NCBI RefSeq assembly: GCF_006345805.1
Contig: NC_042999.1
Coordinates: forward strand, 154,752,001-154,816,000
Direction of reading: 5' to 3'
DNA: 64,000 bases
Source of the DNA: Octopus sinensis
Lineage: Eukaryota
Position 1 is the stretch's first letter, and every line of letters starts with the position of its first letter. The notes below the pieces were generated by a model. It was given only the letters and a program-made list of their open reading frames with translations. It did not search any database and was not told the origin of the DNA. Below, one piece after another: positions 1 to 63,630 of this stretch. Position numbers and translations under genes: made by a program.

Positions 1-53
<53 letters not shown>

Positions 54-70
54 TAGTAATAATCATAATC

Positions 71-122
<52 letters not shown>

Positions 123-133
123 TAATAATAACA

Positions 134-211
<78 letters not shown>

Positions 212-215
212 TAAT
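1..215. repeat. (AAT)n microsatellite
   Basis: Direct sequence. Confidence 0.98.
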
Positions 216-221
216 AAAATA

Positions 222-2268: not shown

Positions 2269-2269
2269 A

Positions 2270-2910
2270 ACACATTAGAAAGTGATAAGTGCAGAATCTT
2301 TGGAGAAACTGGTGAAACCATATGGCATATTACCAGAAGGAATGTAAGCAATGCCATGACAATATATAGCCAGGCTTATCCATTGGACACTTTGCAACAA
2401 GTATGGACTTTACAGTGCAAAAAATTGGTATAACCACAAACCCAAAAGCATTGTTGAAAATAAAAATGCCTAGATCCTGTGGGATTTTATGATTCAGTGT
2501 GACCATGAGATAGAGAATATGAAGCAAGACATAGTCTTAATTGAGAAAGAAAACAAACTATGCTGGATCATAGATATAGCATGTCAAGCTGACAATAAAG
2601 TATGCAGTAAGGAAGAAAGAAAAGTTGAGAGATATGACAGGTTAGCTTGGGAAGTTAAGCAGTTGCGGTCGATGAAAACGGTAGCAGTAGTACCAATAAT
2701 TGTCAGAGCCCTGGGAACAGTGAGCAAAAATCTCGAGAACTACGTGAAACAAATAGGGACTGCAATAAGGGTGGAGCACTGCTTGGAACTGCTTGAATAC
2801 TCTGGAAGGTGCTCGAAAAATTAAAGGTGTTACCTTAGTTCACTAGTAGTGAACAGCTGACACTGTAGTACATCTCCAGTGTTAGAAGCTGTGCAATGCA
2901 ATAATAATAA
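2270..2910 (+). mobile_element. 3' fragment of an RLE-type (R4/Dong-like) non-LTR retrotransposon
   Basis: CCHC remnant, ILWDF.IQCDHEI..DIV..IIDIAC restriction-like endonuclease region, then a 3'UTR with a GTTCACT/AGTGAAC stem-loop running into (AAT)n. Confidence 0.85.
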
Positions 2911-2939
2911 TAATATAATAATAATAATAATATGCAGCA

Positions 2940-3520
2940 CAAGACCAAAGCCTCCCCACCAGAAATTACCAAAAACATATAATGAAAAGAAACATAACAA
3001 GTAACTATAGAATATGTGGAGATGGACAAGAAACAATAAACCATATTATCTCTGGCTGTCCAGTTCTTGCTAAGAAGGAATATATTCACAGACACAACAG
3101 AGTTGGAATTTATATACACTGGAAACTGTGACAATACTATGGAATAACAGCAGAAAAAAGATGGTATAGGCACACACTAGAAAAGGTCACAGAAAACGTG
3201 AAAGCAACCATACTCTGGGATATGCCAATACACACAGACAGAGAAATTAAGGCCAATAGGCCAGATATAGTTATCAGAGATCATCAAGAAAAAAATATTT
3301 TCTTATTGATGTATGAATACCAACAGTTGACAACGTTTCTCTTAAAGAAACTGAGAAACTCTCAAAATACAAAGATCTGAAAATAAAGGTAACTCAAATG
3401 TGGAGTCTAAAACCAGAAACAATTCCTATCATAGTAGGTTCATCAGGTATGATAAAAAACATTCAGACAAATACATAACGAAAACACCAAGACTTACAAC
3501 TATATATAACATACAGAAAA
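2940..3520 (+). mobile_element. Second RLE-type LINE fragment
   Basis: ILWDMPIHTDREIKANRPDIVIRD, with frameshifts. Confidence 0.8.
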
Positions 3521-3563
3521 TATATAGGTTATATGTGTGTGTGTGTGTGTGTGTGTATGCGTG

Positions 3564-3621
<58 letters not shown>

Positions 3622-3624
<3 letters not shown>

Positions 3625-3787
3625 GATGGGCTTCTTCCAGTTTCCATCTACCAAATCCACTCACAAGGCTTTGGTTAATCTGAGGCTATAGTAGAAGACA
3701 CTAGCCCAAGGCACCACGCAGTGGGACTGAACCCAGAACCATGTGGTTGGGAAGCAAGCTACTTACCACACAGCCACTCCAGTGCCT
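3622..3787 (-). mobile_element. SINE family A (tRNA-like head GGAGTGGCTGTGTGGTAAG; octopus OK/OR-type), head part
   Basis: Matches the head of the full copies at 15867 and 34764. Confidence 0.85.
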
Positions 3788-4208
3788 ATGCATGGACTCT
3801 TACAGTGATTGACTTACAGTTTTGTAATATTGATTTTCCATATTGATAATATTTTATCTAACTATTGAATATTGATATTTAATAGTCAAATAGACAGATA
3901 TATGGATTCCAATATATGCAGACAAACTAGATTGAGTTGAAATGTATTCTTTTCCATTAAGGCATATCAAAACTTCCTTGGATAGCTAGAAATAACAGCA
4001 AACATTCTTGAAATCATACCTTATGGCTTAAAAAAAAAAAAGGTAAGAACTATTGCGTTATAGCACTAGACACATACACAATCAGAGTAAAAAAATTATT
4101 ACATGGTCACAGCTGGAACAAAATTAAATTGAGGCTTGCTTGACCTAGGGTTAAATAACAACAGCAACACCACTAACAATGACAACAGTAATAATTCTAA
4201 AGGCTTAC

Positions 4209-4399
4209 TTTCCAATCCACCACCGAGATCCTGTCGAGTTTGTATCTCTTCAGTGTTTGATGTTACCAACAAACTAGACATTTCTTTCTCAACTTCATCG
4301 AGTTTCCCCTTTTGTAACAAATACCGTGGACTTTCAGGTAACCAGATGAACCCCACGAATTGGATGATCGATGGGATCAAGGCAAATCCCATTAGATAT
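4209..4399 (-). CDS. SLC2A13: SLC2A13-like coding exon 3 (191 nt)
   Basis: Acceptor ttctttgcAG|. It encodes (R)YLMGFALIPSIIQFVGFIWLPESPRYLLQKG with the PESPR motif. Best donor is A|GTAAGC at 4208. The poly-Leu tail of the track ORF is intronic microsatellite. Confidence 0.9.
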
Positions 4400-4585
4400 C
4401 TGCAAAGAAATATAACTGTGAAAAACAATCAAAGAATATATCTTTGGCAAATACGGTGTTACTATTTTAAATCTCAGAGGAAATAAAAGAGAAGACTGAA
4501 TTCAAAAGTAATAAATGGTATCAAATGTGATTAAGATAATCATCAGTTTGAAGGCATTCCCTGCCATTTCAGTGGATGAAGAGTC

Positions 4586-4796
4586 TCTTTTCTTTTACTT
4601 GTTTCAGTCATTTGACTGCGGCCATGCTGGAGCACCGTCTTTAATCGAGCAAATCGACCCCAGGACTTATTCTTTGTAAGCCTAGTACTTATTCTATCAG
4701 TGTCTTTTGCCAAACTGCTAAGTTACGGGGACGTAAACACACCAGCATCAGTTGTCAAGCGATGGTGGGGGGACAAACACAGACACAGAAACATAT

Positions 4797-4837
<41 letters not shown>

Positions 4838-5062
4838 GCGGCGAGCTGGCAGAAACGTTAGCACGTCGCGCGAAATGCGTAGCCGTATTTCGTCTGCCGT
4901 TACGTTCTGAGTTCAAATTCCGCCGAGGTCTACTTTGCCCTTCATCCTTTCGGGGTCGATTAAATAAGTACCAGTTACGCACTGGGGTCGATATAATCGA
5001 CTTAATCCCTTTGTCTGTCCTTGTTTGTCCTCTCTATGTTTAGCCCCTTGTGGGTAGTAAAG

Positions 5063-5114
<52 letters not shown>

Positions 5115-5276
5115 GACAGGCTTCTTTCAGTTTCCGCCTACCAAATCCACTCACAAGTCTTTGGTCGGCCCAAGGCTATAGTAGAAAACACTTGCCCAAG
5201 GTGCCACGCAGTGGGACTGAACCTGGAACCATGTGGTTCGTAAGCAAGCTACTTACCACACAGCCACTCCTGCGCC
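4586..5276 (-). mobile_element. Full SINE A, interrupted by SINE B in its internal (TA)n
   Basis: 3' half at 4586-4800, head at 5115-5276. Confidence 0.88.
4837..5067 (+). mobile_element. SINE family B (head GGCGGCGAGCTGGCAGAAACGTTAG, B-box GTTCAAATTCC)
   Basis: Pol III A/B-box-like motifs; many copies in the window. Confidence 0.88.
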
Positions 5277-5309
5277 TAGAAGATTTTCTATAAAAGAATA
5301 TCATCATCA

Positions 5310-5645
5310 TCATCATCATCATCGTTCAGCGTCCGTTTTCCATGCTAGCATGGGTTGGACGGTTCTACTGGGGTCTGTGAAGCCAGAAGGCTTCATCAGG
5401 CCCAGTCAAATCTGGCAGTGTTTCTACGGCTGGATGCCCTTCCTAACGCCAACCACTCCGTGAGTGTAGTGGGTGCTTTTTACGTGCCACCCGCACTGGT
5501 GCCAGACAGAGCTGGCAAACGGCCACGAACGGATGGTGCTTTTTATGTGCCACCGGCATGAGGGCCAGGCGAGGCTGGCAACGGACACGAAACGGGGCGG
5601 TGCTGGCAACGGTCGCGAAACGGAAAGTTCTCTTACATGCCACTG
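5310..5645 (-). mobile_element. RTE 3'UTR/tail fragment with (CAT)n
   Basis: Reverse complement of the 1900-2268 RTE 3' end. Confidence 0.8.
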
Positions 5646-5744
5646 GAGAACCAGATGGCTGCACCAGGCTCACGTTTTGTTTTTGTATATACATGTATGT
5701 GTGTGTGTGTACATTTGAAAAGGCCATTCATTGCTTGAACTTAC

Positions 5745-5904
5745 CGCCAACTTTCATGTTTTATATAGCTGAAGGCTGCAGCTAAAAGAACAGAGAAAAA
5801 CAGACCAAATATTAAAGCAGATTGATTAAGAACCATAGCGTATCCTCTATATTTCGCTGGACTGCTTTCAGCTAAATACACCGGCACTGCCACCGAGGAG
5901 AGAC
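5745..5904 (-). CDS. SLC2A13: SLC2A13-like coding exon 2 (160 nt), absent from the ORF track
   Basis: Acceptor ttccAG| and donor |GTAAGT. It translates as (G)LSSVAVPVYLAESSPAKYRGYAMVLNQSALIFGLFFSVLLAAAFSYIKHESW(R), which carries the sugar-porter PxYxAE..P..RG motif. Phase 1 in and phase 2 out joins exons 1 and 3 in frame. Confidence 0.93.
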
Positions 5905-6571
5905 CTGGAAGAAAGAAGGGCGGACAATTAGGAATAAATTAATTATAAAAACAAATAAATTTTTAGAAAAAATATAATGTGTCTTGAATGGCAAAACAAT
6001 GCAGAGCGGACTATAATAACTGTTATAATTTAATTATTCATAGTCTTATATAATAATAATATTTCAGAATACAAAACTTCCTTCTTCAGATATTGCTAGG
6101 AATTGTAGCAGTGACTCAAACAATTCTTAGTGATATCTACAGATGTAGGCATTAACACACTCAGTGCTGTGGGCATGATAATTAATTGATTAATTAATTA
6201 AGACCATACCTGTATTGAGGAGAGGTAAGCATTGTTGAACAATGTTTAACTCTGCAAAACAGAGGCAAGGGAGAAAATACAAATCAAAAGTGATATTTTG
6301 AAGTGGGTTGGTCTGAGGAGTCCCAATTAATCAGATAATTAAATCAGATAATTAAATTATGTGGTGAAGGATGAGTTGATTTTTGGCAAACATGCTGATA
6401 ATCCAGAATTTGGTTTAATCTAACTTTAATGAAGAATTTAGTAAAATAATCTATCTTAGCAGAAATAGTATATTTTAGCAGAAATATGGTAATAAAAATG
6501 TTAATAATGACAAAAGTTATTTGACAAAATTCTTGGGTCTTATTAAAATTGATTAAGACAAAAGCTATATA

Positions 6572-6802
6572 TATTTCTTTACTACCCTCAAGGGGCTAAA
6601 CACAGAGGGGACAAACAAGGACAGACAAAGGGATTAAGTCGATTACATCGACCCCAGTGTGTAACTGGTACTTAATTTATCGACCCCGAAAGGATGAAAG
6701 GCAAAGTTGACCTCGGCAGAATTTGAACTCAGAACATAGCGACAGACGAAATACGGCTATGTATTTCGCCCAGCGTGCTAACGTTTCTGCCAGCTCGCCA
6801 CC
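6572..6802 (-). mobile_element. Young full-length SINE B with 18-bp TSD
   Basis: TAAGACAAAAGCTATATA at 6554-6571 and 6806-6823. Confidence 0.92.
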
Positions 6803-7384
6803 TTTTAAGACAAAAGCTATATATTTCAACACAAATATGGTAACAAAAAAATTTAGAATTTCCACTAGAACTTCCACTGACTATTATAATTTAAATAGTT
6901 GTTGGTACCTTTTTTTGTGTTAATGCTAATTATCACCAAGCACAAAAGCAATGAGACATGATGAGATGCCTATGAATTTTGTTTGCAGGACGATATCAAA
7001 TGATACAAAACCTCAAGCAAGAAAAGATGATTGTGACCTCAATAGTATTGCTTGGTTGACAGTCTGCCACAACAGATACAGCTTGAATGTCATCATTTTA
7101 GGTTGTCAGTCGCATTCATTGACACGGGTTTCAAATCCACCTCCGCATTACTATCACAGCTATAGTTAATGAGAAGTAAAAAAAAGTCTCCTCTGTTGGA
7201 AAATTTTTCTCAACTCCAACCTGAACAATGAATGGTAGGAGTCTTCTTTGACAAGTAAAAACAAAATGGAATTAATAAAATCAATATATTATATTTTCTC
7301 AGCAGATTCATTCACATCTTAAAAATCAATATATTATTATCATCATTATTATTATTATTATCCAATGTCTTTACACAGCTTTTA

Positions 7385-7485
7385 ACAATGGAGCTGTACT
7401 ACGGTGCCAGCTGTTCACTACCAGTGAACTAAGGCAACACGCCTTATTTTTCGAGCACCATCCGGAGTGTTCGAGCTGTTCCATT
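7385..7485 (-). mobile_element. Extreme 3' end of the RLE-type LINE, inserted in (TTA)n
   Basis: Matches 2826-2905 in reverse; flanked by TTA repeats on both sides. Confidence 0.8.
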
Positions 7486-7608
7486 ATTATTATTATTATT
7501 ATTAGTAGTAGTAGTAGTAGTAGTAGTATTTTATTTTACCAAGATTTTTGCTGGAATTGAAAAATAATCATAACTGAATACTACTTAAGGTGTATACATA
7601 TATATATA

Positions 7609-8169
7609 TCTCTTATTATAAAAGGCAGATTTTATCTGCCTCCCTTTGTCAGTTATAGAAATCTACAATATAGGATTTCTTCAATTACAATTTACCTAGC
7701 ATTTTTAAGAGTAGAATGCATCGGGTCATGCCAGGTCCAGTTTTTAAAATTTAAACTCCAATTAAGCAAAATTTACAGAAAACTCACACTCTGGTGTGTA
7801 TGTCAAATGCTTTTCTTAATGTGGTTTACACCACACGCACACGCACACACACAGTGTGCAACGAATAAAATGAAAGTAATTGGAAGAGAGTAAATAGTGA
7901 CAGAGTGATTTGAGGAAGACTAAACTGAAAGTATTTAAACCACGACTCAAAAAATAAAAAAACACAGCAAACAGAAACAAATAAATACATAACGATTTAC
8001 TCCTCACACAATTTCTTCAATTAGAGTTTACCTAAGATTTTTCAAAGTACTCCATTCGGTCATGCCATAATATATTTCTTTCAATTTCACCCCCAATTAA
8101 GACAAAATTCGAGAAAACTCAATATTTTAACATTTCACTCCGAAAGCATTGATGTACATGTGTGCGTGC

Positions 8170-8210
<41 letters not shown>

Positions 8211-9297
8211 ATGGGTTGTGCGACACAGAAAGTGTGGTGTGTAAGTGAAGTGCTTTTGTTAGTGTGTGTAAAGAGACAGACAGAGTGAAAGACAGAAATA
8301 ACTGAACTTTTTTTTTCACTTTTTGTAGTGAGTGACTGAGAGAGAAAAGAGAGAGAGAGGTTATGTATGTATATATGTATGTATGGCTTCAGTGACACAC
8401 ACACACAAAAACACATACCTACGTACACCTAAAGCACGCACACACACACACACACACACAGCGGAGCGCGACCTTCGAAATTTTGGTAGTATTAATTTGC
8501 GAGCGTACTTCTAAGCGCGCGTAATTGAAAGTTTTCACTATATCATCACGTGCGAAAAAATTCGAAGGGTTTTGAACAATTGAGATACAGATGTCACGCC
8601 TGTATTGAAACCATTGCTAAGCTGCCGTAATTGCTTAATTAAGACTTTTTTTAAATTGAAAGGGGCAATATGTGACGAGGTTGAAAAAAAATACCCCAGA
8701 AAAAAAAATTTACTGCTGGTATTTATATAATTCACTACTATTTTGCTACAATGTCATGAAAAAGAAAAAATTTAGGTATGTAAATCGAATTCGCCACCCC
8801 CTTTTCCCCGTTCGCGTTTGTGTAAAAAAAATTATTATTTAAGTTTTAAAAATTATTTACTTTGTTCAAAAAATATTAATATTAATTAATTTTCAAGAAT
8901 TATTCAATTTTATTCTGTAAAATAGTAATTAATTCATTTATCTGTAAATCCGCGAGGTTGTTACTCAGGCACCTAGAATGGTAACCTTCAACTAACACTA
9001 TCTCCTCCGAGACCCTGCGGCGCAAGTTGACCAAAATTGAGAGTATGGTAGAAGAAGGGTTGCTCTTCCTTCCGTAGAACATAAAATTCAAATCGGACCA
9101 TGTTAACACCAAAAATTATTTACATCAAAAAGATGCTTTTTTCTATGAAAATCCCTATTTTTTACGATTTTTTCACTGCTGTGTCGCCACTTTTCGGTGT
9201 ATTTCGACCAGAAAAATGTTCACAAAATTTTTACTTTTCAAAATTACAATTCCAGCGGGTCGAAACAAACCCGAGCAACGCCGGTCGATACTGCTAG
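7609..9297 (+). mobile_element. Non-autonomous Helitron, ~1.7 kb
   Basis: 5' TC(TCTTATTATAAAAGG), 3' CCCGAGCAACGCCGG hairpin plus CTAG, inserted between A(7608) and T(9298), no TSD. Confidence 0.8.
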
Positions 9298-9374
9298 TAT
9301 ATATATATTTGTAGAACATGCACACATACGTCTGGAATCACAAACAACAATACAATAATCCCTTGCCATATTCC

Positions 9375-9690
9375 ATCATCATCATCATTGTTTAACGTTC
9401 ACTTTCCATGCTGGCATGGGTTGGATGATTTTGACTGAGGGCTGGCGAACCGGATGGCTGCACCAGGCTCCAATCTTGATCTGGCAGAGTTTTTACAGCT
9501 GGATGCCCTTCATAACACCACCCACTCTGAGAGTGTAGTGGATGCTTTTACATGCCACCGACACGGGAACCAGTCAGGTGGAACTGGCAACAGCCACGCT
9601 CAAATGGCGTTTTTTCACATGCCACTGACACAAGTGCCAGTGAGGTGATGCTGGTAACAATCACGCTGGAATGGTGCCTTTTACGTGCGG
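9375..9690 (-). mobile_element. RTE 3'UTR/tail fragment
   Basis: catcatcattgtttaacgttcac start; similar to 5310-5645. Confidence 0.8.
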
Positions 9691-10189
9691 TTCACCTATT
9701 ATGGTTTATCATTTAACCTTACATCGATTCCTCCGTGTTACTGTTTTGCATTTATAATAATAAAATAAATACATACAAATTATAAAAATGATTTTAAAAA
9801 ACATACAGTACAATACTGTTTCTACTTTGTGGATTTTCACCTATCGCAGGGGCTCTTGGAACGTAACACCCACGATAGTTGAGGCATTAGTGTATAAAAA
9901 AAACCAGAATTTTCAAGAGCTTGAAACTTATGAGTGTGTTATTAAGTATATGACTATGTTCAAGTTTAATCTTCTTTTATCAAGGAATTTTCATATTTCC
10001 TTGTTGAATCCTTTCTGTTAATTTGGCTCAATAGCATTCATGACTCATTTGTCTGTTAACCTCTCAAGATGCACACAATCTCATTTTCAAAATAAAGTAA
10101 TGGAGATAGTGCATTTTTAGTGCCCTTTGCAGTAAGACCTAAAGGATCATGGAAATAATTTTGAAACTGATAATAATCATCAATCCTGA

Positions 10190-10460
10190 TAGGTATGGCT
10201 GTGTGGTAAGAAGTTTGCTTCCTAACCACATGGTCCCAAGTTCAGTCCACTGCACAGCATCTGGGGTATGTGTCTTTTACTATCGCTCTTGGCTGATCAA
10301 TGCCTTGTGAATAAATTTGCTAGACAGAAATTGTATGGAAGACTGTTGTGTGTATGTGGACAATAAACTTTGCTTGTGAAGACCTATTGAGGCAAGTGAA
10401 ATCAAATCAAAATTGCTGCCGTGGCCGATGACAGTACCGCCTGGTTGGCACACATTTTGA
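10190..10460 (+). mobile_element. Degenerate SINE-A head joined to RTE 3'UTR sequence
   Basis: GGCTGTGTGGTAAG head followed by GCTTGTGAAGACCTATTGAGGCAAGTGAAATC, which matches ~1772-1803. Confidence 0.65.
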
Positions 10461-11080
10461 AAAGAGGACTGTGCAGATCTCAAAACTTTGATTGACTAAT
10501 GGATTTAAGAATAGTGTTGGGAAACTCCTTTAAAAAAGAAATCAAACTTGAAATAGTTTCCGTCTGTACTTCCTTCCGGTTTTACAAGGTATGTGCAAAA
10601 GCAAATTGGCATAATTTTTGTACATATGTGAAGTTCAGGACGAGGGACATGTGTTGCACCAGACTTTTGTTGACGGATATTCAGAAAAGATGTGGAAAGT
10701 AGCAGGTTCAGATTGGAGGAAACATAAGTTTCATAGATTGGTGAACTGAGGAGATTGTATAGCAAAATAGATGATGAGTGGTAAGAAAGTTGGCAGTGGG
10801 AAGGGTACAAGATACGAGATTGTTCAATTGGTAGAGTGCAGAGATGGTTTAAAGTAATCACGCGTAGGATGACATAGAACTAAGCTTCGCGGTCACAACC
10901 ACAGCTATAGAAATGGAAGGACTGTGTGTAGAGGACAGTAGATTCGAGAGTAGAAGCAACAATGAATCCGGAGGAAAGTATTAGATTATAAAACATGCAG
11001 AAAATAGTTGAAAATAAGTTTTAACAAATAATGATAAATCTCCGAGTGAGATATAAACAGCAGCAGCACGACATCATGAT

Positions 11081-11557
11081 GTATGTTTGCCACCTAAATG
11101 TGGCTGATCCATATGGGACGATACTACTAGAATTTATAGCCCCAGCAAGACATCTCCTTCAGCTGGCTAATGACACACTGTCTGTGCCCTACCAGTATTT
11201 GCAAAAGGAAATCATCTTTCTCATCTCTAGCCTGACGTGATACACACGGACCAGGATTTCTGGGTAGTAACCCGTCATCAGCGCGTGAGAATCGAGATCG
11301 GCGACTTTTTGTCGCTGGAAAAAGCATACATGTTTGCATCCGGTGATTGCCACGCGCTGATGACGGGTTACTACTCAGAAACCCGGGTCCGTGTGTATCA
11401 CGTCGGGCTAGAGACGGGAACGATGATTTCCCTTTGCAAATACTGGTAGGGCACAGACAGAGTGTCATTAGCCAGCTGGAGGAGATGTCTTCCTGGGGTT
11501 ATAAACTACAGTATCATCGTCCCATATGGGTCAGCTACATTTAGGCGGAAAATATAC
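11081..11557. mobile_element. Foldback/MITE-like element, ~207-bp inverted arms with a 63-bp spacer
   Basis: 11081-11287 is the reverse complement of 11351-11557, roughly 85-90% identical by eye. Confidence 0.85.
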
Positions 11558-12392
11558 TTCAGTTTAAACAAAGTTACTGGAAAGCTGTCAGATTTCATTT
11601 GTCAACATAAAGCAACCGCTCTTTGAAAACTCATTTGGAGAAAGAGATTAAGTAGAAAATAATAATATACACAAAAACTAAAAAGAAAGAAAGTAAATAA
11701 ATAACAAATAAATATAGAAACTGCCTGCATTGAGTAAAGTTTGGTGAATATAGATAACAATTAAAACTGTTGCTAAAGGCATAAACAAAATATACAATTG
11801 AAAGTTGAGTTAAGAAAGGATAACAATGGAGACTTAGTCTGTAATAGAGATAAGAATAATAGAAAAGACAGCTGCGAAACCTGACGGTTTTCTACATATT
11901 TTAATGGTTTAGAGTCTTATAACGGAGTAATAGATAGGAGCGTGTTTGTAAGTTGATAATAGTTCAAACCTTAAATGCATACCTTCAGACAAGACGTCTT
12001 TTGTCTTGCATATATTGCAACTCAGTTTTAACCCACAACTTATATGTATGTCGTAGATTCTAGCACTAACCAAAGGATCTTAAATTTATGTATCATTGTC
12101 ATTCCTTAAGCAACCAAATATACTTAGATAATGCTGTGATGAATTTTCTTTCTGGGTTAATAAAGATATTTGTGCTGATAAAGGTGAACAATTAATACAT
12201 ATACAACATAAATAAAAAGGTTCCCCCCCCCACTGTGTTTTACGCTTTGGGGTTTTACATATGGTCTGGTATTGTTCCGTAGAGTTGCGTTTAGTAATAA
12301 CGAGAAACGCCTGTAAAGTTAATGGTGACATATGCACGAACGCCAGCAGGCCGAAACTTGGAAGTCGCTTTCACACCTCTTGTAAAAGTTCA

Positions 12393-12464
<72 letters not shown>

Positions 12465-12974
12465 CAACTGCAGCGTGGAAGGTGTTTATAAGCCATTTAA
12501 GAAACACACAAAAACCGTTAGATTCACTTCAACATTTAAATTTAATTTGTCAAAATATTTTCGTCGCTTTGAAACCGCGATCTGTTCACTGATAAAACTT
12601 CGTGTTGCAACACGAACAACACTATCTTCGCAAAAAGAAATGTTGTTGATAAGAGCTATCCAATTTCTTAGAAGACGTAAACACGTTCCGATTCGAGTTC
12701 AGTAAACGTAATACGTCATCAAATTATTCTATATTAAACAAACGTTTGATGATCTTAATTAAGCTCAGGGATCTTGAATACAAAACCGAAGTTTCTAGAA
12801 TCTTTTATTTATAACTTGTGTACATGGTGAGCGGTACGAAAATATATGCTTTGCTGTTACAACCACTCGTTGCTTCCTGTTTGCCGTCTGATAGTAGGTA
12901 GCTGCTTGCAATGCAACCACGTATTCTTGAATCGTAGCAGATATGTTGTTACTTTCTTTTAAAAAAATAATAAT

Positions 12975-13220
12975 AAATGCGCCCTTTTAAAGCCTAGCCA
13001 AGGTCATGGGCACGGTACCCCGGTTTCTATGGCGTATGTGTTCCCCAGCTGGACGGGACGCCAGTCCATCGCAGCGTTACTCATTTTTGCCAGCTGATGG
13101 ACTGGAGCAACATGAAATGAAGTGTTTTGCTCAAGAAAACAACTCGTCGCCCGGTCCAGTAATCGAAATCACAATCTTACGATCATGATGCTGACACCCT
13201 AACCACTAAGCCACGCACCT
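12975..13220 (-). mobile_element. SINE family C variant (tRNA-like head plus CORE-like TTGAGCAAxACACTT segment)
   Basis: Head reverse complement ...aaccactaagccacgcacc. Confidence 0.75.
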
Positions 13221-13974
13221 CCACACTTTCTTTTTACTAACATTGAATTCTTGTAAATTCGTTTTGGTTGCAAACACCATTGTTGCAACAAACACTTGGT
13301 TTTCATATAGTCATTTTGTTTACTTTGAAAGCGACGGCATGTGAAGTTGTATTTTTGAAACCTGACGCGCGAAACTCTTAAAAACAACGGTGTGTCAGGT
13401 AAAGTTATTTGATTAAAACAGATTAGAATGTGAAGGTGTGATGTAACAGAAATAGTTTATTTGGACGTTTTGTTACAGCGCACCTTGATAGCCGCTTCTT
13501 TAATTAAATAACGCTTATGTTGCTCTTACATCTCATTAGTAAAACCACCCGCAGTAATTAAAGGTGTAAAGATAGATCAAAGAGTTTTAGTTCGACCCTT
13601 TAACATAGTGGAGTGACGGTAAACACACACACACACACCTTGTGAGTGAATTTGGTAGAAAGAAACTGAAAGAAGGCTATCGACTGTTTACGTCCCCGTA
13701 AACTAGTGTTTGATAAAAGAGGCCGATAGCATAAGTACCAATTTTTTTTTTTTTAACTAGTACTGAGGTCAATTCTTTTGACTAATATTCTTCGAGATGG
13801 TGCCCAAGGATGTCTGCAGTCTAATAACTGAAGCAAGTAAAAGAACTAAATAGTAAAATAGTATAATTTTCAGTGATTAGAAATAGTAATTTATAGATCG
13901 TTGACGTTAGAAACAGAGATAAGTGGAGCGAAAGGCATTTTGTTTGTGAATGTCACAATACGTCAAAATATTCT

Positions 13975-14932
13975 TTTCTATTCTAGACACAAGGCCCGAA
14001 ATTTTGAGGGAGAGTACCAGTCGATTAGATCGACCCCAGTACGCGATTGGTACCTAATCTATCGACCACGAAAGGATGAAAGGCAAAGTCGGCCTCGGTG
14101 GATATTGAATTCAGAAAATAAGGACAGACGAAATATCACTAAGCATTTCGCCCGACGTGCTAACGTTTCTTATTTCTTTATTGCCTACAAGGGGCTAAAC
14201 ATAGGAGGGACAAACAAGGACAGACAAAGGGATTAAATCGATTACATCGACCCAGTACGCGACTAGTACTTAATCTATCGACTCCGAAAGGTTGAAAGGC
14301 AAAGTCGACCTAGGCGGAATTTGAACTCAGAACATAACGGCAGACGAAATACCTATTTCTTTACTACCCACAAGGGGCTAAACACAGAGAGGACAAACAA
14401 GGACAGACAAACGGATTAAGTCGATTATATCGACCCCAGTGCGTAACTGGTACTTATTTAATCGACCCTTAAAGGATGAAAGGCAAAGTCGGCCTCGGCG
14501 GAATTTGAACTCAGAACGTAAAGACAGACGAACTACCTATTTCTTTACTACCCACAAGGGGTGGAATTTGAACTCAGAACGAAGCAGCAGACGAACTACC
14601 GCTAAGCATTTCGCCCGCTGTGCTAACGTTTCTTATTTCTTTATTGCCCACAAGGGGCTACACACAGAGGGGACAAACAAGGACAAACAAACGGATTATG
14701 TCGATTATATCGACCTCAGTGCGTAACTGGTACTTATTTAATCGAAACCGAAAGGATGAAAGGCAAAGTCGACCAAGGCGGAATTTGAACTCAGAACGTA
14801 AAGACAGACGAACTACCTATTTCTTTACTACCCACAAGGGGTGGAATTTGCACTCAGAACGTAGCGGCAGACGAACTAAGCATTTCGCTAAGCATTTCGC
14901 CCGCTGTGCTAACGTTTCTGCGAGCTCGCCGC
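13975..14932 (-). mobile_element. Tandem multimer of SINE B units
   Basis: Six or so units with recurrent junctions and a local ~280-bp duplication. Confidence 0.88.
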
Positions 14933-15271
14933 CTAACAAGGCGTCAAAATATTATATTTTGATTGGGTAAAACAATTTTTAGTTGAGCTGAGTTTTCGCT
15001 CTGAATTAAATTTAAAAAGAAAAGAGGTCATTGGTTCATCATTCATTGTATTTCGAGGACTGATGAAAAGAGGTAACCACTACCAATGTATGTAACATCC
15101 TCATAACACTGTTATAAACGGGAAATAGATCTAAATCCAAAACTTCACCTTGAAAAACTCGATTTTCAACAAGATTTTGAAGAGGAGCTATGTTCAGTAT
15201 GAACAATAACGATTAATTATGATTATTTTTAATAAGTATAAAATATGCAATTAATTAGAATATATAACTAA

Positions 15272-15566
15272 GAAGGAGTGGCTGTGTGGAAAGTAGTTTG
15301 CTTACCAACCACATCGTTCCGGGTTCAGTCCCACTGCGTGGCACCGTCGGCAAGTGTCTTCTACTATGGCCTAGGGCCGACCAAAGCCTTGTGAGTGGAT
15401 TTGGTAGACAGAAACTGAAAGAAGCCCGTCGTATATATGTATATATATATATCACGTGATCACGTGACCGACCAGACCATCAGATGTTGTTACACATCGC
15501 TGATCACAATGCGTTCGCATTGTTTTAGCCTCCGAATGACGCCACCACGCTAGCTAAGCGAGCAGG

Positions 15567-15617
<51 letters not shown>

Positions 15618-15840
15618 GTGTGTATATGTTTGTGTGTCTGTATTTGTCCCCTCAACATCGCTTGACAACCGATGCTGGTGTGCTTACATTCCTGTAACTT
15701 AGCGGTTCGGCAAAAGAGACCGATTGAATAAGTACTAGGCTTACAAAGAATAAGTCCTGGGGTCGATTTGCACGACTAAAAGGCGGTGCTCCAGCGTGGC
15801 CACACTCAAATGACTGAAACCAGTAAAAGAGTAAAAGAGT
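15272..15840 (+). mobile_element. Full SINE A carrying a ~120-bp internal module (TCACGTGATCACGTGA...)
   Basis: Head, (TA)n, module at 15452-15570, (TA)n, 3' half. Confidence 0.85.
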
Positions 15841-15866
15841 ATTGAGTTTACGGTCGTAATAAACTA

Positions 15867-16254
15867 GGCTGTGTGGTAAGTAGCTTGCCTACCAACCACA
15901 TGGTTCCGGGTTCAGTCCCACTGCGTGGCACCTTGGGCAAGTATCTTCTACTATAGCCTCGGGTCGACCAAAGCCTTGTGAGTGGATTTGGTAGACGGAA
16001 ACTGAAAGAAGCCCGTCGTATATATGTATATATATATATGCGTGTGTGTGTTTGTGTGTCTGTGTTTGTCCCCTAGCATTGCTTGACAACCGATGCTGGT
16101 GTGTTTATGTCCCCGTTACTTAGCGGTTCGGCAAAATAGACCGATAGAATAAGTACTGGGCTTACAAAAGAATAAGTCCCGGGGTCGAGTTGCTCGATTA
16201 AAGGCGGTGCTCCAGCATGGCCGCAGTCAAATGACTGAAACAAGTAAAAGAGTA
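15867..16254 (+). mobile_element. Near-full SINE A ending ~20 nt inside intron 1
   Basis: Direct match to the other SINE A copies. Confidence 0.9.
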
Positions 16255-16273
16255 TGGAATAAAATGTACTTAC

Positions 16274-16736
16274 CAAATGCTAGGCTGACAAAAATTCTAC
16301 CAGGTAAAGTGTAATATACTCCAGTCGTCTGAAGAATCGACCCAATAATATGCAGGACACCAGATAACAAAATGGTCTTCTTTCGTCCAATTTTGTCCGA
16401 CAATTGGCCACAGACGATGGAACCAAGCATAGCTGCTCCGCTCGTAACTCCTACTAAACGTTCTTTCCAGCGTATTTCACCAGGGAAATCTTTCTTTAAC
16501 AGCAGGTAACCAGATACGGCCAACATCTGATAACCCATCAGGAATGACATACATAAGCAGCACAGCATCAACGCAACAAACCGTGAAGTTATTTTCGGTT
16601 CGTTTGTTTCTGTTTTCCGGGGATCGTTCGCTTGTTGTTCATTAGATTCCTGTGGTTTCGATACCAGCTCCATAAGGTCTGTCTTCGCTGAGTCTTTTTC
16701 GTGCGAAGAACGAGTCAGTTCGTCGATAAGCGTCAT
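16274..16736 (-). CDS. SLC2A13: SLC2A13/HMIT-like (proton myo-inositol cotransporter-like) sugar porter, first coding exon (TM1-TM4)
   Basis: ATG at 16736 with an in-frame TGA upstream; the ORF track starts at a GTG. It encodes FLMGYQMLAVSG, WKERLVG, motif A GQLSDKIGRKK and GRIFVSLAFG. It ends at a phase-1 donor G|GTAAGT (16273-16268). Confidence 0.88.
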
Positions 16737-16812
16737 AATGTTCACACTTCTGCTTAAGATGTGTTTTGTTTGAGTAACTGATTCTCAGAAGCAGTTTTTA
16801 TATTCAAATGCT
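16737..16812 (-). other. 5'UTR portion and putative splice acceptor upstream of the start codon
   Basis: The minus strand reads ttttcgttcttctttcAG|CATTTG at 16812/16810, a polypyrimidine tract plus AG 74 nt before the ATG. This implies an unlocated upstream non-coding exon. Confidence 0.45.
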
Positions 16813-16879
16813 GAAAGAAGAACGAAAATAGACACATTTTATTTTAGACTAATCGCACATGCAGAACATAGCGAAAAAG

Positions 16880-16881
16880 AA

Positions 16882-16933
<52 letters not shown>

Positions 16934-17243
16934 GAGTAATAATAGAGAGAGCGAGAGAAAGAATGAGGGAAGGCGAGACATATAGAAGAGAAGCGACAGA
17001 GTCAGAGTTGAAGGAGGAGAAAGGAAGGAAGAAAGAAGAGAAGGAAAGAAAAGAAGAAAGAAAGAAAGAAAGAAAGAAAAGAAGAAAGAAAGGAAGGAAG
17101 AAAGAAAGAAGGAAAGAAAGAAAAGAAGAAAGAAAGAAAGAAGGAAAGAAAGAAAGGAAGAAAGAAGGAAAGAAAGGAAGAAAGAAGGAAGGAAGGAAAG
17201 AAAGAAGGAAAGAAAGAAAAAAGAAAGAAAGAAGGAAAGAAAA

Positions 17244-17295
<52 letters not shown>

Positions 17296-17420
17296 GAAGA
17301 AGGAAAGAAGGAAAGGAAGAAAGGAAGAAAGAAGGAAAGAAAGAAAGAAAAGAAGAAAGAAGGAAAGAAAGAAAGAAAGGAAGGAAGAAAGAAAGAAAGG
17401 AAGAAAGAAAGAAAGCGAGC
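16880..17420. repeat. (AAT)n followed by a ~430-bp homopurine (GAAA/GGAA)n tract
   Basis: Direct sequence. Confidence 0.95.
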
Positions 17421-17924
17421 GAACAATGAAGAGAACAAATGAAAATAATTCCCGTAAACAAATTTCACAAAATGTGAGAAACATATTTATTCGTTTATTT
17501 ATTCATTTATTTATTGTTCTTGTTGTTGTCGTTGTAGTCGATGTCACCGTCGTGGTGGTTGTTGTTTAACGAAGCTGTGATCACAAATATTTCAGCCTTG
17601 ACAATCCTTTCCTAGATTCGGATAATGCTTATCTAGAACTTACCCGAAGGTGGTGTGACTTTTTCTCGTTTTCTTTTGATACAAAAAAAAAAAAAAAAAA
17701 AAAACAAACAAAAAACAGAAGATGGAGGATGGTTCTGGGGTTGGGCGGTGGGGTTCAAGGTTTTTTTTTTTTTATAAAGAAAAATTGTTCTTTTAAACTT
17801 TCTGATGCACCGAATAACAAATAAAACAAAATGTGCGCGTGCGCGCTCGCGCTCATGTGAGCATGTGCTTGCGTGTATGTATGTATGTATGTATGTATGT
17901 ATGTATGTATGTATGTATGTTTAT

Positions 17925-18477
17925 GTCAGGTCACTTTCGAGTGCTACTGGTAACATGTAACCCAGTACAACCTGTTGCATGGTCGGGTCGTCGGGGACTA
18001 AACCGGCAACCCCACCAAGCTTGCTTGGTGAGGAGGGTGTTTATTGGACACCCTGCGGGACGAAAAACAAAACCCGCCATTGGGCGGAGAAACTCTTGAG
18101 AGTCAACGGCCATCCAATAAATGTCTTAAGGCTGTATCATGCGCGGGGACATAGAAATAATCGGACTGAATACCCGATCGCGCGGTTAAACCTATGGTAG
18201 TGAAGGACTCCTAGCCTTTGTTAAGGCATCCTTCTAGGAGAAGGTAACTCAGGTAACTGGGATAACTCCGACATAAAACCTGCGGCTCAGTGGTTACCGA
18301 TGATGTTGACTTGTTCTTCTTTTCGGATTATGGCTGCTGTTGCTTAGTGAGTGGGATTGACTCAGTGCAGAGCCTTTCCTCACTTTAAAAAAATTCTTCT
18401 TGCAGGCATTGCACGATAACAACATTGATTAAGCTTCGTGCAATGGCCATACTCGATAGCGAGGGGGTAGCCACCAT
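17925..18477 (+). mobile_element. Bipartite non-autonomous RTE derivative (putative 5'UTR plus 3' tail) in (TATG)n
   Basis: Its 3' end TTAAGCTT.GTGCAATGGCCATACTCGATA is shared with 30278-30307. The 5' part is hairpin-rich and has no RT. Confidence 0.65.
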
Positions 18478-19694
18478 GTATGTATGTATGTATGTATGTA
18501 TGTATGTATGTATGTATGTATGTATGTATGTATGTATGTATGTATGTATGTATGTATGTTTGTATGTATGCATGTATGTATGTAGGTATGTGTGTGCATG
18601 TGTGTATATCATTGGATATGTACGGTATATATGTGTGTACACACACACACACATATGCATATCAAAATAAGCAACAAGGATATCCAGAGGTAATGGAGTA
18701 CGATCGTTTCATGCAACACCATTTAATTGAACAATGCAATCATTACATCAATTTAAAATGCAAAGCAATCTTCAGCTGCACGAAGACATAGAATTTAATT
18801 AAATTAGAACAGATGGACACATTAGTATAATTATACCTAAAGTCTCCAAGAAGTTAAGGAGATAGACAAAGAACATGCTGTCTCACTCCAGTTTAGAAGT
18901 TACTGAATTTTCAAGAAGATATACATTGTTACAGACTCTGCTTGTTACCGATCTTTTGTTTTTATGGGGTCAGCTTTTATGGGGTCAGTTTTAATTTACA
19001 GACTAGTTTATGAAATCCCTTGTATATTTAAGGCTTAGGGAACAGAGGGGTAAGGCTGAGAGAGCAGACAGACATCATAGCTAGTATAGTCATAAAAATC
19101 AAGATTTATTAGAAGCAATATCATGAGGTTTGGCAAAGGAAAACTTAAAACAAGATGTGAATTACTTCACCAGGTTAGCAGCAAACAACCTGCGAAAACC
19201 TCCTGTACCAAGTGAACCCGGCAGTAGCATTGTAGCCACCAGTTCTTATACATGTGCCTCAACCGGCTCTGCATTACAGCCACAACTTCTTGATACAGCA
19301 TTTCAACTATCATGTACCTTGACTACGAACTGGTATTTATCATCCGTGTGTCTGAACATTCTTCTAAGGTCATATTATAGACTCTTTCAACGCTCTTGCA
19401 CACGCACTTCGTATACATGACGGCCTGTCTATCATTATGTATATACATGACGCATACACACACATGTTAACATATAAATAAAATCTTCTCTTAAACATTC
19501 TACCCAGTTGTGACTCTCTTCCTTCTGGCACTTATACTCATTTATTCTCTTCATATATATTGTATTGACCTTGTGATGTGCAAAGGAGCCATTCTCTTCA
19601 CCTCTCCTTCGCACGGTCATTTACATATATATATATATATAAATATTATATATATATATATATATGTATGTATATCTGTGTGTGCATGTGGGTA

Positions 19695-19726
<32 letters not shown>

Positions 19727-21329
19727 CACCCGGTATTATCTGGAAAATGGGGTAGATCAGCTTGTGACCGATTTTTGAATCCTCGAATGAGAATCGTATC
19801 ATTTTGCATAAATGTTTCACTTCAAACATAGTGTTGCTATCCAAACACATACACACATGCAAACATACACACGTACACACACACATGTACGCGCACGGGT
19901 ACATACATGCCTGAATTCATACATGTACATACACATAAAATACATACATACAGATACACACACAGATCCATATACATACATAAATGCATACATACACATA
20001 CATAGATGCAGATACATTCATTCATACATACATACATGCACAAATACAAGTTCAAGTTTATACCTGTAATTATTGGGGCCCTGGGATATGTAACACACTG
20101 CCTAAATACCAATCTTGAGAAATTAGGCTTCTAAAAACCAGAAAGGAGAAAGCTAATTCAAGGATTATAGATCCAATCCATGACTGGAACTGTAAAAATC
20201 TGTAAAACTTTCCAGAAGTTTATCATTTAAGTGTATATGAGCATGTCTAGATATGCCACTATATGCATGAGAATACATACATAAAACATACAAATTTGCA
20301 CTTATACATACATACATACATACATACATACATACATACATACATACATACATACATACATACATACATACATACAAATATAAATACCCCGTTGTTGATA
20401 TTGAAATTCTAATGAAGGTACCTTGAATTTACGTTAGAAACCGGTTCTTACTCTATTGGCAAGAAATCTTGAAATAAAACTGAACAATGATATACATATA
20501 TGCTCGCATGCACACATTTCTGCACTGGTACAGGATTTTAAATTTTTTATAATTTTTTTATTTGTATTTTCACTACGCGCATTTCACTAAACAATTACAA
20601 AAGGAAATGACGCGCGCGCACATACACACGGAAATACTGGTTCAATATCTAGTATTTGGGGTGAATTAATTACCATACACGGGCATCACCGGTGCAATTA
20701 CTTTCATTATAATATCCTTACTTCAAATGTTGAGTTTTAGTGAATGATCCTGCTGTCTTCAATGCCTGTCTATCGCGTGTGGTGGGTGGATCGTCAAGTT
20801 GCCGCACGCATTTTTAGTAGCTTAGAGTAGGCTCGAATTAGAGATTATTCTTTGTGGCTAATGGCGTAAGTCCTGATTGGAAGAAGAAAGAAGACAGCAG
20901 ATGCTACTGCCACTACCACCACTGACACAAAATAACAACAAAGACAACTGTAACATAATCAAACATGACAGTATCAACAATGATGACAATTCCACAAAAG
21001 AAAAAAAAAATATCCTTCGCGTATGTTACAGATCAATGGATTTCTCATTCTCTCGAAGGTAGAGCAGACGCCGTTTAAAAATATGAAAACGATGTTATTC
21101 GCTCTGGAATCATTTTAATCGTAGAAGAGAAGGTGCTGTGTACCAGAAACGAAAAAGATGCATATTTTAGAAGTGGATCAATCAAAGAAGAAAGAAGCCA
21201 TAGTAGCCATCCCCATCCGAAATCGAGAAATGTCTGAAAATGTGTAACATTCCGTAGAAAACACCGTCCGAGGAAATCAACACGGGGCGGCCAGGAAGCG
21301 TGAGGGTCAGTTTATGCTATGCCTATTAG

Positions 21330-63124: not shown

Positions 63125-63620
<496 letters not shown>

Positions 63621-63630
63621 TGACACCGCC

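What the first reader, a model, noticed from the sequence alone, without database searches (positions are those of the whole stretch)
16500..16560. HMIT-like transporter has lost the TM1 proton-coupling aspartate (GYD to GYQ)
Seen: TM1 reads FLMGYQMLAVSG, with the CAG codon at 16529-16527. Established: HMIT/SLC2A13 and bacterial H+ symporters have FGYDT, and this Asp (XylE D27, GlcPSe D22) is the proton site, while the uniporter GLUT1 has Asn there. The TM4 partner Arg (GRIFV) and motifs GRKK, AE..P..RG and PESPR are kept, and the frame is clean, so this does not look like decay. Inference: a divergent, possibly proton-uncoupled paralog of the myo-inositol transporter. Caveat: this residue alone does not always predict coupling.
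Basis: partly seen in the sequence, partly recalled or inferred. Interest (0 to 1): 0.72.

Follow-up and report, generated by a model that had tools for sequence, protein, structure and literature searches.

The report
Divergent inositol-transporter gene lacking proton site
The window holds the first three exons of a real, unusually fast-evolving animal relative of the proton/myo-inositol transporter HMIT in which the aspartate that normally carries the proton is a glutamine, so it probably cannot use protons in the usual way; such losses turn out to be fairly common in this family, and only half the gene can be seen.

Summary
On the minus strand, codon 70 (CAG, 16529-16527) of an ORF starting at ATG 16736 gives FLMGYQMLAVSG. 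The Gln aligns with GlcPSe Asp22 and with the FGYDTG Asp of named HMIT proteins.

- The gene is a sugar porter (Pfam Sugar_tr, E = 3.9e-39), and all its named neighbours are HMITs.
- Only exons 1-3 (TM1-TM6) lie in the window, so "clean frame" covers half the protein.
- It is highly divergent: at most 42% identity to any homolog, against 50-63% between canonical HMITs of different phyla.
- The change is not a single residue. TM1 is remodelled (M63, Q70, L72, Y77 each seen in 0 of about 146 homologs). A TM4 glycine invariant in 146/146 homologs is Ser151, which matches the loss-of-function GLUT1 allele G130S.
- Losing this Asp is not rare: 29 of 146 related domains have N, F, H, C, S, G, T or E.

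Most likely this is a fast-evolving HMIT-family paralog without the canonical H+ site, acting as a facilitator or exchanger if it is functional. Early decay or a non-transport role remain live alternatives. It is a new member of a known kind, of modest interest.

The parts
16274..16736 (-). Exon 1 (463 nt). It runs from start codon ATG 16736-16734 through a hydrophilic N-terminal tail, TM1, TM2, the GRKK loop, TM3 and most of TM4, ending at the donor G|GTAAGT.
   Evidence: Pfam Sugar_tr on this exon alone scores E = 6.9e-7. tblastn of nine homologs all end at 16272.
16785..16787 (-). In-frame TGA upstream of the ATG. It fixes 16736 as the first possible start codon in this exon.
   Evidence: Read. 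The ORF list starts after this stop.
16527..16529 (-). Codon 70, CAG = Gln, at the TM1 position of the proton-binding Asp (XylE D27, GlcPSe D22, STP10 D42, HMIT FGYDTG).
   Evidence: The column holds D in 117/146 homolog domains and Q in 0/146.
16296..16298 (-). Codon 147, AGA = Arg. This is the TM4 salt-bridge partner (XylE R133, GLUT1 R126, GlcPSe R102) and it is retained.
   Evidence: R in 146/146 homologs.
16284..16286 (-). Codon 151, AGC = Ser, at Arg+4 on the same face of TM4. All 146 homolog domains have Gly here. It is equivalent to GLUT1 Gly130.
   Evidence: The GLUT3 alignment pairs 'grifvs' with 'GRLVIG'. G130S is functionally severe in GLUT1 (PMC6290489).
16377..16388 (-). GRKK motif (codons 117-120) in the TM2-TM3 cytoplasmic loop, conserved.
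   Evidence: G117 and R118 invariant.
5905..16273 (-). Intron 1 (about 10.4 kb, phase 1, GT...AG), rich in repeats and microsatellites.
5745..5904 (-). Exon 2 (160 nt): the end of TM4, the AESSPAKYRG motif (5872-5843) and TM5, up to ...SYIKHESW(R).
4400..5744 (-). Intron 2 (about 1.3 kb, phase 2, GT...AG).
4209..4399 (-). Exon 3 (191 nt): TM6, PESPR (4338-4324) and the start of the central cytoplasmic loop. Donor is A|GTAAGC at 4208. A weaker alternative donor, TTG|GTAACA, lies about 55 nt upstream.

Best explanation
The window carries the 5' half (exons 1-3, TM1-TM6) of a real, spliced, protein-coding animal gene of the sugar-porter family. Its nearest relatives are proton/myo-inositol cotransporters (HMIT/SLC2A13). 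It is a fast-evolving, lineage-specific member, most probably a paralog.

The canonical proton site has been dismantled. The TM1 carboxylate is now Gln70, its neighbours Thr-Gly are Met-Leu, and several small TM1 packing residues have become bulky. The TM4 Arg is kept, but the invariant Gly one helical turn below it is Ser151.

Without a titratable carboxylate facing the TM4 Arg, the Asp-Arg 'latch' that couples proton binding to gate closure cannot operate. If the protein transports at all, it should therefore move its polyol or sugar substrate downhill, or by exchange, independently of pH gradients.

Shown here: gene structure, family placement, site homology, the extent and pattern of divergence, and the recurrence of Asp loss in the family.
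Inferred: loss of H+ coupling, from mutant and comparative data on XylE, GlcPSe and the GLUTs.
Unknown: the substrate, the C-terminal half, expression, and the host species.
For: Gene reality:
- There are three exons with canonical splice sites, and their junctions coincide with where every homolog's tblastn alignment breaks.
- The 271 codons contain no stop or frameshift despite at most 42% identity to any relative.
- In a crude simulation, the chance that a neutral sequence keeps this frame open is 0.18 after 40 random substitutions, 0.03 after 80 and 0.008 after 120. This ignores indels.
- Matches to the family consensus are graded by conservation: 81% at highly conserved columns, 45% at intermediate ones and 32% at variable ones. 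That is the signature of constraint.

Family:
- Pfam Sugar_tr scores 3.9e-39. The best solved structure is GlcPSe at 1e-29.
- Named neighbours are HMITs from mammals, gastropods, nematodes, crustaceans and mites.

Site:
- Q70 aligns with GlcPSe D22 and the HMIT Asp.
- Arg147 is retained, as in 146/146 homologs.

Mechanism from the literature:
- The TM1 acidic residue is key for H+ coupling. XylE D27N and GlcPSe D22N support only downhill or counterflow transport, with unchanged sugar affinity (PMC8154325; PMC5770559).
- Natural uniporters carry Asn or Ala at this position, with added hydrophobic residues around it (PMC5491310). This parallels Met71 and Leu72 here.
Against: - Only half the gene is visible. 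The C-domain, which holds most substrate-binding residues, could be broken or absent.
- Seven of 36 strongly conserved columns are changed, which puts the window at the 6th percentile of the family.
- Gly151Ser matches a human loss-of-function allele of GLUT1. The long branch (97th percentile) could therefore reflect relaxed selection rather than a new function.
- XylE D27N alone is non-functional in vivo, and seven further changes were needed to make a working uniporter. Absence of the Asp therefore does not predict a working facilitator.
- There is no expression evidence and no ortholog for dN/dS. The source genome and its relatives appear to be absent from the protein collections.
Confidence: 0.5

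Rival explanations
1. This is a decaying or already non-functional copy: a recently pseudogenised or truncated duplicate of HMIT. The loss of the Asp, the loss of the invariant TM4 Gly and the other unusual residues would then be relaxed-constraint damage rather than adaptation.
For: - Seven of 36 highly conserved columns are changed, against a family median of 2.
- Residues never seen in about 146 homologs occur at M63, Q70, L72, Y77, T143 and S151.
- S151 matches GLUT1 G130S, which markedly reduces function.
- The terminal branch is at the 97th percentile.
- The C-terminal half is not in the window.
- Another Asp-less mollusc homolog, Tegillarca P0205, looks truncated or garbled in the alignment.
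Against: - The 271 codons are open and splice sites are intact.
- Conserved columns are retained far better than variable ones.
- All cytoplasmic signature motifs and the TM4 Arg are intact.
- Gaps relative to homologs are few, in frame and in loops.
- Divergence this large under neutrality would very probably have introduced stops or frameshifts.
Confidence: 0.25
2. The protein is still ion-coupled, through a different site. This could be an acidic residue in the unseen C-domain or a Na+ site, so the Gln does not mean uniport.
For: - Coupling in sugar porters depends on more than the TM1 Asp. XylE E206 acts as an auxiliary element, GlcPSe is only loosely coupled, and GLUT2 and GLUT10 have the Asp yet are reported as uniporters (PMC5770559).
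- The C-domain is unseen.
Against: - No new acidic residue appears within TM1-TM6 of the window protein (sequence).
- The position equivalent to XylE E206 is Ala, judged by my manual alignment of TM6 and not by a tool.
- The reviews consulted describe the TM1 acidic residue as key or necessary for H+ coupling.
Confidence: 0.1
3. The protein has lost transport activity but keeps a role as a sensor, transceptor or regulatory partner, as Snf3/Rgt2 do among yeast hexose-transporter homologs.
For: - The ORF is maintained while residues at gating and packing positions in TM1 and TM4 are changed radically.
- Precedent exists for transporter-like sensors in this family (PMC6071613, listed).
Against: There is no positive evidence. 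The N-terminal tail is short, the C-terminal tail where the yeast sensors carry their signalling extension is unseen, and the sugar-binding TM5 Gln (Q182) is retained.
Confidence: 0.1
4. The Gln codon is a sequencing or assembly error, or a rare allele.
For: There is a single assembly and no reads to check.
Against: Asp to Gln needs two base changes in one codon. The neighbouring codons are also atypical (M71, L72), so the whole helix is consistently diverged.
Confidence: 0.03

Closest known systems
HMIT / SLC2A13 (GLUT13), the H+/myo-inositol symporter of animals
   Same: It is the closest named family. The two share the TM1 frame xFLxGYxxxxVSG, the GRK/R loop, the TM4 Arg, AExxPxxRG, AFSY...WRY and LPESPR. 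Exon junctions coincide with the breaks in the homolog alignments.
   Different: - Gln replaces the FGYDTG Asp.
- Identity is at most 42%, where canonical HMITs of different phyla share 50-63%.
- The invariant TM4 Gly is Ser.
- TM1 small residues are replaced by bulky ones.
- The HMIT-specific Cys-rich extracellular loop and the whole C-domain cannot be examined.
Facilitative GLUTs (GLUT1, 3, 4, 5...) with Asn or Ala at the TM1 position
   Same: There is a neutral residue opposite a retained TM4 Arg (GLUT1 N29/R126), with hydrophobic residues next to it (PMC5491310). This is the natural precedent for uniport in the family.
   Different: The window protein is not a phylogenetic member of those classes, because its neighbours are HMITs. 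It has Gln rather than Asn or Ala. It also carries Ser at the GLUT1 G130 position, which is deleterious in GLUT1.
Engineered neutral-replacement mutants XylE D27N and GlcPSe D22N
   Same: They have the same kind of substitution (carboxylate to amide) at the same site. They show what it does in isolation: substrate binding is unchanged, ΔpH-driven uptake is lost, and only counterflow or downhill flux remains.
   Different: Those are single changes in an otherwise symporter background. Here the surroundings have co-diverged, so the outcome could be better (a working uniporter) or worse.
Other natural Asp-less HMIT-like paralogs: Trichinella (GYF, tandem copies, P0107 and P0191), Pinctada P0147 (GYG), Tegillarca P0205 (GYH), Soboliphyme P0164 (GYC)
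   Same: These are animal genes annotated or clustering as HMIT-like that have independently replaced the Asp.
   Different: They carry different replacement residues, all keep the TM4 Gly, and they do not group with the window protein in the NJ tree.

Membership tests
Sugar porter family (MFS; Pfam PF00083 Sugar_tr) | Significant match to the family profile above the curated cut-off | tested here: met
   135.2 bits against a cut-off of 22.3, E = 3.9e-39, profile positions 4-213 of 452. The PDB best hit is GlcPSe at 1e-29.
Sugar porter family (MFS; Pfam PF00083 Sugar_tr) | N-domain signature motifs: G-R-[KR] in loop 2-3, TM4 Arg, E-x6-R-G after TM4, P-E-S-P-R after TM6 | tested here: met
   GRKK, R147, E167...R174-G175 and PESPR are all present in conserved columns.
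Sugar porter family (MFS; Pfam PF00083 Sugar_tr) | TM4 G-R-x-x-x-G glycine (GLUT1 G130) | tested here: not met
   Ser151, where 146/146 homolog domains have Gly.
Sugar porter family (MFS; Pfam PF00083 Sugar_tr) | Twelve TM helices with a C-domain carrying the QQxSGxN and PETKG motifs | not testable with these tools
   Only TM1-TM6 lie in the window. No C-domain exon was found in 1-4208.
HMIT / SLC2A13 subfamily | Nearest named relatives are HMITs | tested here: met
   The NJ tree places it inside the HMIT-dominated clade.
HMIT / SLC2A13 subfamily | Ortholog-level similarity (canonical HMITs share 50-63% identity across phyla in this domain) | tested here: not met
   Best identity is 42%. This falls in the lowest 6% of the sampled domains for best identity to any other.
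HMIT / SLC2A13 subfamily | TM1 F-G-Y-D-T-G with the proton-binding Asp | tested here: not met
   The window has M-G-Y-Q-M-L.
HMIT / SLC2A13 subfamily | H+-coupled myo-inositol transport; Cys-rich extracellular loop 9-10 | not testable with these tools
   This needs the C-terminal exons and a transport assay.
Facilitative (uniporter-type) sugar porters | Neutral residue at the TM1 proton site with the TM4 Arg retained | tested here: met
   Q70 and R147.
Facilitative (uniporter-type) sugar porters | pH-gradient-independent, non-electrogenic downhill transport | not testable with these tools
   This requires expression and flux or current measurements.

The most novel reading that the evidence does not exclude
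The gene is a functional, neofunctionalised HMIT paralog caught after a natural symporter-to-uniporter (or symporter-to-sensor) conversion. The conversion would have been achieved by coordinated remodelling of the TM1/TM4 proton-latch face: Asp to Gln, Thr-Gly to Met-Leu, Gly-Gly to Met-Ser, and the universally conserved TM4 Gly to Ser. This would provide a natural counterpart to the seven-mutation XylE-to-uniporter experiment.

A more speculative add-on applies only if the host is a coleoid cephalopod. Codon 151 (AGC) is one A-to-I edit away from the invariant Gly codon (GGC), so RNA editing could restore the glycine in the transcript.
Probability: 0.2. Interest if true: 0.55.

Novelty: new member of a known kind. 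Interest (0 to 1): 0.3.

Why it matters
If the protein is functional, it offers a natural experiment on what else must change when a sugar-porter symporter gives up its proton site. It shows which TM1 and TM4 packing changes accompany loss of the Asp, including tolerance of a Ser at the position of the human disease allele GLUT1 G130S. It also bears on how animals diversify inositol or polyol transport.

It also carries a warning for annotation. About a fifth of the proteins nearest to it in sequence, several of which carry the name 'proton myo-inositol cotransporter', lack the proton-binding residue. The name should therefore not be taken as evidence of proton coupling.

If the gene is a decaying duplicate, it is ordinary.

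Tried and rejected
- **Exon 1 alone as a query** to the word-indexed protein search gave no hits. The protein is too divergent for that method.
- **The spliced N-half in the same search** returned only bacterial sugar porters. The exhaustive HMMER search was needed to reach the animal relatives.
- **Exact look-ups of the exon-1 ORF** in public assemblies, with the GTG and the ATG start, found nothing. One search failed because of my own frame error.
- **Identifying the host** through the retroelement ORF at 54264-54860 failed. The best hits are about 55% identical and come from cnidarian and sponge elements and anonymous contigs. The source genome and its close relatives therefore seem absent from the collection, and I withdrew the idea that 'no near-identical protein' means 'unannotated or unexpressed'.
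- **Looking up the nearest NJ neighbour** (P0168) gave only an anonymous 3-kb Logan contig.
- **Rfam and tRNA scans** of the window found nothing.
- **A second copy, an alternative Asp-bearing first exon, or C-terminal exons** were not found by tblastn at E up to 10.
- **An ancient Asp-less clade** shared with the bivalve His and Gly types or the Trichinella Phe type is not supported by the NJ tree. The tree rests on about 196 columns and has low resolution.
- **RNA-editing rescue of Ser151.** The local fold shows no notable duplex (z = -1.5), and the inverted-repeat scan call was malformed and not repeated. The idea is kept only as speculation.
- **First CDS assembly** used exon coordinates off by one and gave stops. 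This was corrected.
- **Structure prediction** was not run. The tool returns no coordinates, and an MSA-driven model would not discriminate between the hypotheses.

Full report
**1. What is in the sequence**

The finding lies in a minus-strand ORF. Reading 16900-16200 on the minus strand shows an ATG at 16736-16734, preceded by an in-frame TGA at 16787-16785. The ORF then stays open to a G|GTAAGT donor after 16274.

The window is eukaryotic in character. It is 31-49% G+C, full of microsatellites and dispersed repeats, and has no long ORFs other than low-complexity ones.

**2. Gene structure**

A motif scan of the minus-strand translations found two further coding blocks far downstream. Reading their borders and assembling them gives three exons:

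| Exon | Coordinates | Length | Acceptor | Donor |
|---|---|---|---|---|
| 1 | 16736-16274 | 463 nt | (start codon) | G\|gtaagt |
| 2 | 5904-5745 | 160 nt | tctttcttccag | CG\|gtaagt |
| 3 | 4399-4209 | 191 nt | atttctttgcag | A\|gtaagc |

- My first assembly was off by one base at two junctions and produced stops. The corrected one translates cleanly into 271 residues plus one base.
- tblastn of nine full-length homologs against the whole window breaks at exactly these junctions.
- The same search finds no other copy, no alternative first exon and no C-terminal exon, even at E = 10.
- No plausible exon is visible in 1-4208.
- The window therefore holds only the N-terminal half (TM1-TM6 and the start of the central loop). 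The gene continues beyond the left edge.

**3. Family**

- The spliced N-half matches Pfam Sugar_tr at E = 3.9e-39 over profile positions 4-213 of 452.
- Among solved structures the best match is the Staphylococcus epidermidis glucose/H+ symporter GlcPSe (4LDS, 1e-29), followed by plant STP10, GLUT3/5/4, XylE and GLUT1.
- An exhaustive phmmer search of 1.84 billion cluster representatives gave 16,195 hits, but the best are only 30-43% identical.
- Every named protein among the nearest ones is a 'proton myo-inositol cotransporter' or an unnamed MFS protein from an animal: Trichinella, Toxocara, Biomphalaria, Lymnaea, Elysia, Tegillarca, Pinctada, Penaeus, Tigriopus, Leptotrombidium, Schmidtea and mammals.
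- The call 'HMIT-like' is correct.

**4. Is the Gln really at the proton site?**

- The HMMER alignment to GlcPSe pairs 'gyqmlavsg' with 'GYDNGVISG'. The chain numbering makes that Asp residue D22.
- In a MAFFT alignment with horse HMIT, Biomphalaria, Penaeus and a bacterial porter, Q70 sits in the FGYDTG column. G68, Y69, R147, E167, R174, G175, W207, R208, P229, E230 and P232 are invariant around it.
- In 146 homologous N-domains the column holds D 117, N 15, F 3, T 3, H 2, C 2, S 2, G 1, E 1 and never Q.
Because Asp to Gln needs two base changes, it is not a one-base error.

**5.

(a) The protein is unusually divergent.
- Canonical HMITs from different phyla share 50-63% identity over this domain (mammal against shrimp 61%, bivalve 63%, copepod 59%, Toxocara 55%).
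- The window protein reaches at most 42% to anything.
- It sits on a terminal branch at the 97th percentile of an NJ tree.

(b) The change is not one residue.
- In TM1, M63, Q70, L72 and Y77 are each seen in 0 of about 146 homologs, and M67 and M71 in 2 of 146.
- Small helix-packing residues (G63, G64, G72, A77) have become M, S, L and Y.

(c) The TM4 arginine face is also altered.
- Arg147 itself is kept, as in 146/146 homologs.
- The Gly four residues later, also present in 146/146 homologs including all other Asp-less ones, is Ser151 (AGC).
- That position corresponds to GLUT1 Gly130 (GLUT1 R126 + 4; the GLUT3 alignment is).

(d) Overall, the window differs from the consensus at 7 of 36 columns that are at least 85% conserved. 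The median homolog differs at 2 and the 90th percentile is 5.5.

**6. Is it decaying?**

Arguments against simple decay:
- The 271 codons are open and the splice sites are intact.
- Gaps against homologs are few, in frame and located in loops.
- Agreement with the family consensus is graded: 81% at highly conserved columns, 45% at intermediate ones, and 32% at variable ones. The last figure equals the family median. Uniform neutral damage would not spare the conserved columns in this way.
- In a crude forward simulation, the frame stays open with probability 0.18 after 40 random substitutions, 0.03 after 80 and 0.008 after 120, before counting indels.

Arguments that keep decay alive:
- The window ranks only at the 6th and 12th percentiles for retention in the two conserved classes.
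- Two experimentally sensitive positions are hit.
- Half of the gene is unseen.

I therefore read this as relaxed but real constraint. That is compatible with a neofunctionalising paralog, and less so with a recently dead one.

**7. How unusual is loss of the Asp?**

It is not very unusual: 29 of the 146 nearest domains lack it.
- Trichinella has tandem HMIT-like copies with Phe (GYFT) beside a canonical Asp-type gene.
- The pearl oyster Pinctada has GYGT, the clam Tegillarca has GYHI, and the nematode Soboliphyme has GYCC.
- Many unnamed eukaryotic sequences have Asn.
- These do not cluster with the window protein in the NJ tree, and its nearest neighbours all have Asp. The loss here looks independent and lineage-specific.
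- All of these others keep the TM4 Gly.

**8. Mechanism**

- Deprotonated, it salt-bridges the TM4 Arg and acts as a 'latch' on TM1. Protonation releases TM1 so the outer gate can close (PMC8154325).
- XylE D27N and GlcPSe D22N bind sugar normally but perform only counterflow or downhill transport and are insensitive to the proton gradient.
- The H+ site is 'necessary but not sufficient' for symport (PMC5770559).
- D27N alone does not make a good uniporter. Seven further changes were needed, and GLUT1 has accumulated hydrophobic residues around Asn29 (PMC5491310).
- By inference, the window protein cannot run the Asp-Arg latch. It has Gln70 flanked by Met71 and Leu72, no new acidic residue in TM1-TM6, and Ala at the position of XylE E206 (the last from my manual reading of TM6).
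- If it transports, it should be a pH-gradient-independent facilitator or exchanger. The hydrophobic flanking residues resemble what natural uniporters did.
- The sugar-binding TM5 Gln (Q182) is retained. Most substrate contacts lie in the missing C-domain, so the substrate cannot be predicted.

**9. Limits**

- The host species could not be identified. The retroelement ORF at 54264-54860 (zf-RVT) has no hit above about 55-65% identity.
- No near-identical copy of the transporter exists in the collections. The absence of orthologs therefore reflects database coverage, not biology.
- 'Cephalopod', 'paralog beside a canonical HMIT', expression and dN/dS are all untested.
- One speculative idea was considered: in a coleoid cephalopod, A-to-I editing could read codon 151 (AGC) as the invariant Gly codon (GGC). 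The local RNA fold gave it no support (z = -1.5).

**10. Verdict**

- This is a new, highly divergent member of a known kind: a sugar porter that has lost the TM1 carboxylate, within the HMIT clade where such losses recur.
- It is of modest interest. Interest would rise if the full gene proves intact and expressed, because the co-occurring TM1/TM4 remodelling, including a Ser at the GLUT1 G130 position, would then be a natural example of how the proton latch is dismantled.

Noticed in passing
window 16839-17484: A low-complexity polypurine/polypyrimidine tract of about 640 bp lies 100-750 bp upstream of the transporter's start codon, in its presumptive promoter or 5' region. On the + strand it is a (GAA/GGA/AAG)n-type repeat that reads as KKERKKE..., and on the gene's strand it is CTT/TCC-rich.
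   Followed up: no
window about 16235-16075 (-) and about 63140-63290 (+): A dispersed repeat of about 150-190 bp is present in inverted orientation at two places, with about 85% identity over the core. One copy begins about 40 nt into intron 1, right after the exon-1 donor. It is probably a SINE-like element.
   Followed up: partly
window 54264-54860 (+): A 198-aa ORF with a zf-RVT domain (zinc-binding region of reverse transcriptases; Pfam E = 1.8e-6). It is a retroelement fragment. Its best database relatives are only about 55% identical and come from an octocoral (Paramuricea), a sponge (Amphimedon) and anonymous contigs.
   Followed up: partly
window 60191-60760 (+) and about 1850-2210 (-): Internally periodic ORFs share the unit '...AFYVPPAREPVRRHWxRPRSD...'. 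They appear at both ends of the window on opposite strands and have no Pfam match. This is probably another repeat family with tandem substructure.
   Followed up: no
window 13901-14970 (+): Three overlapping ORFs repeat the unit 'RNWYLFNRPLKDERQSRPRRNLNSERKDRR...FARCANVSYFFIAHKGL'. This points to a tandemly duplicated element inside intron 1 of the transporter gene.
   Followed up: no
window 1-260, 12400-12460, 18430-18650, 20165-20410, 63200-63700 and elsewhere: Long microsatellites are very dense, including (TA)n, (TATG/CATA)n, (TAA)n and (CA)n types. They dominate the ORF lists as [14 protein letters not shown] or CMYVCMYV translations.
   Followed up: no
related proteins P0107, P0259-P0261 (Trichinella pseudospiralis) and P0191, P0284 (Trichinella sp. 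T6): Trichinella encodes HMIT-like genes, sometimes predicted as two-copy fusions of about 1200 aa, with Phe at the proton-site position (GYFT). They occur alongside an Asp-type HMIT-like gene (P0108, P0264). This is an independent case of Asp loss in proteins that are all annotated 'Proton myo-inositol cotransporter'.
   Followed up: partly
related protein P0205 (Tegillarca granosa, His at the site): This bivalve Asp-less homolog has a deletion in the TM4 GxGxG region and a non-homologous C-terminus in the alignment. It may be a pseudogene or a mis-predicted gene model.
   Followed up: no
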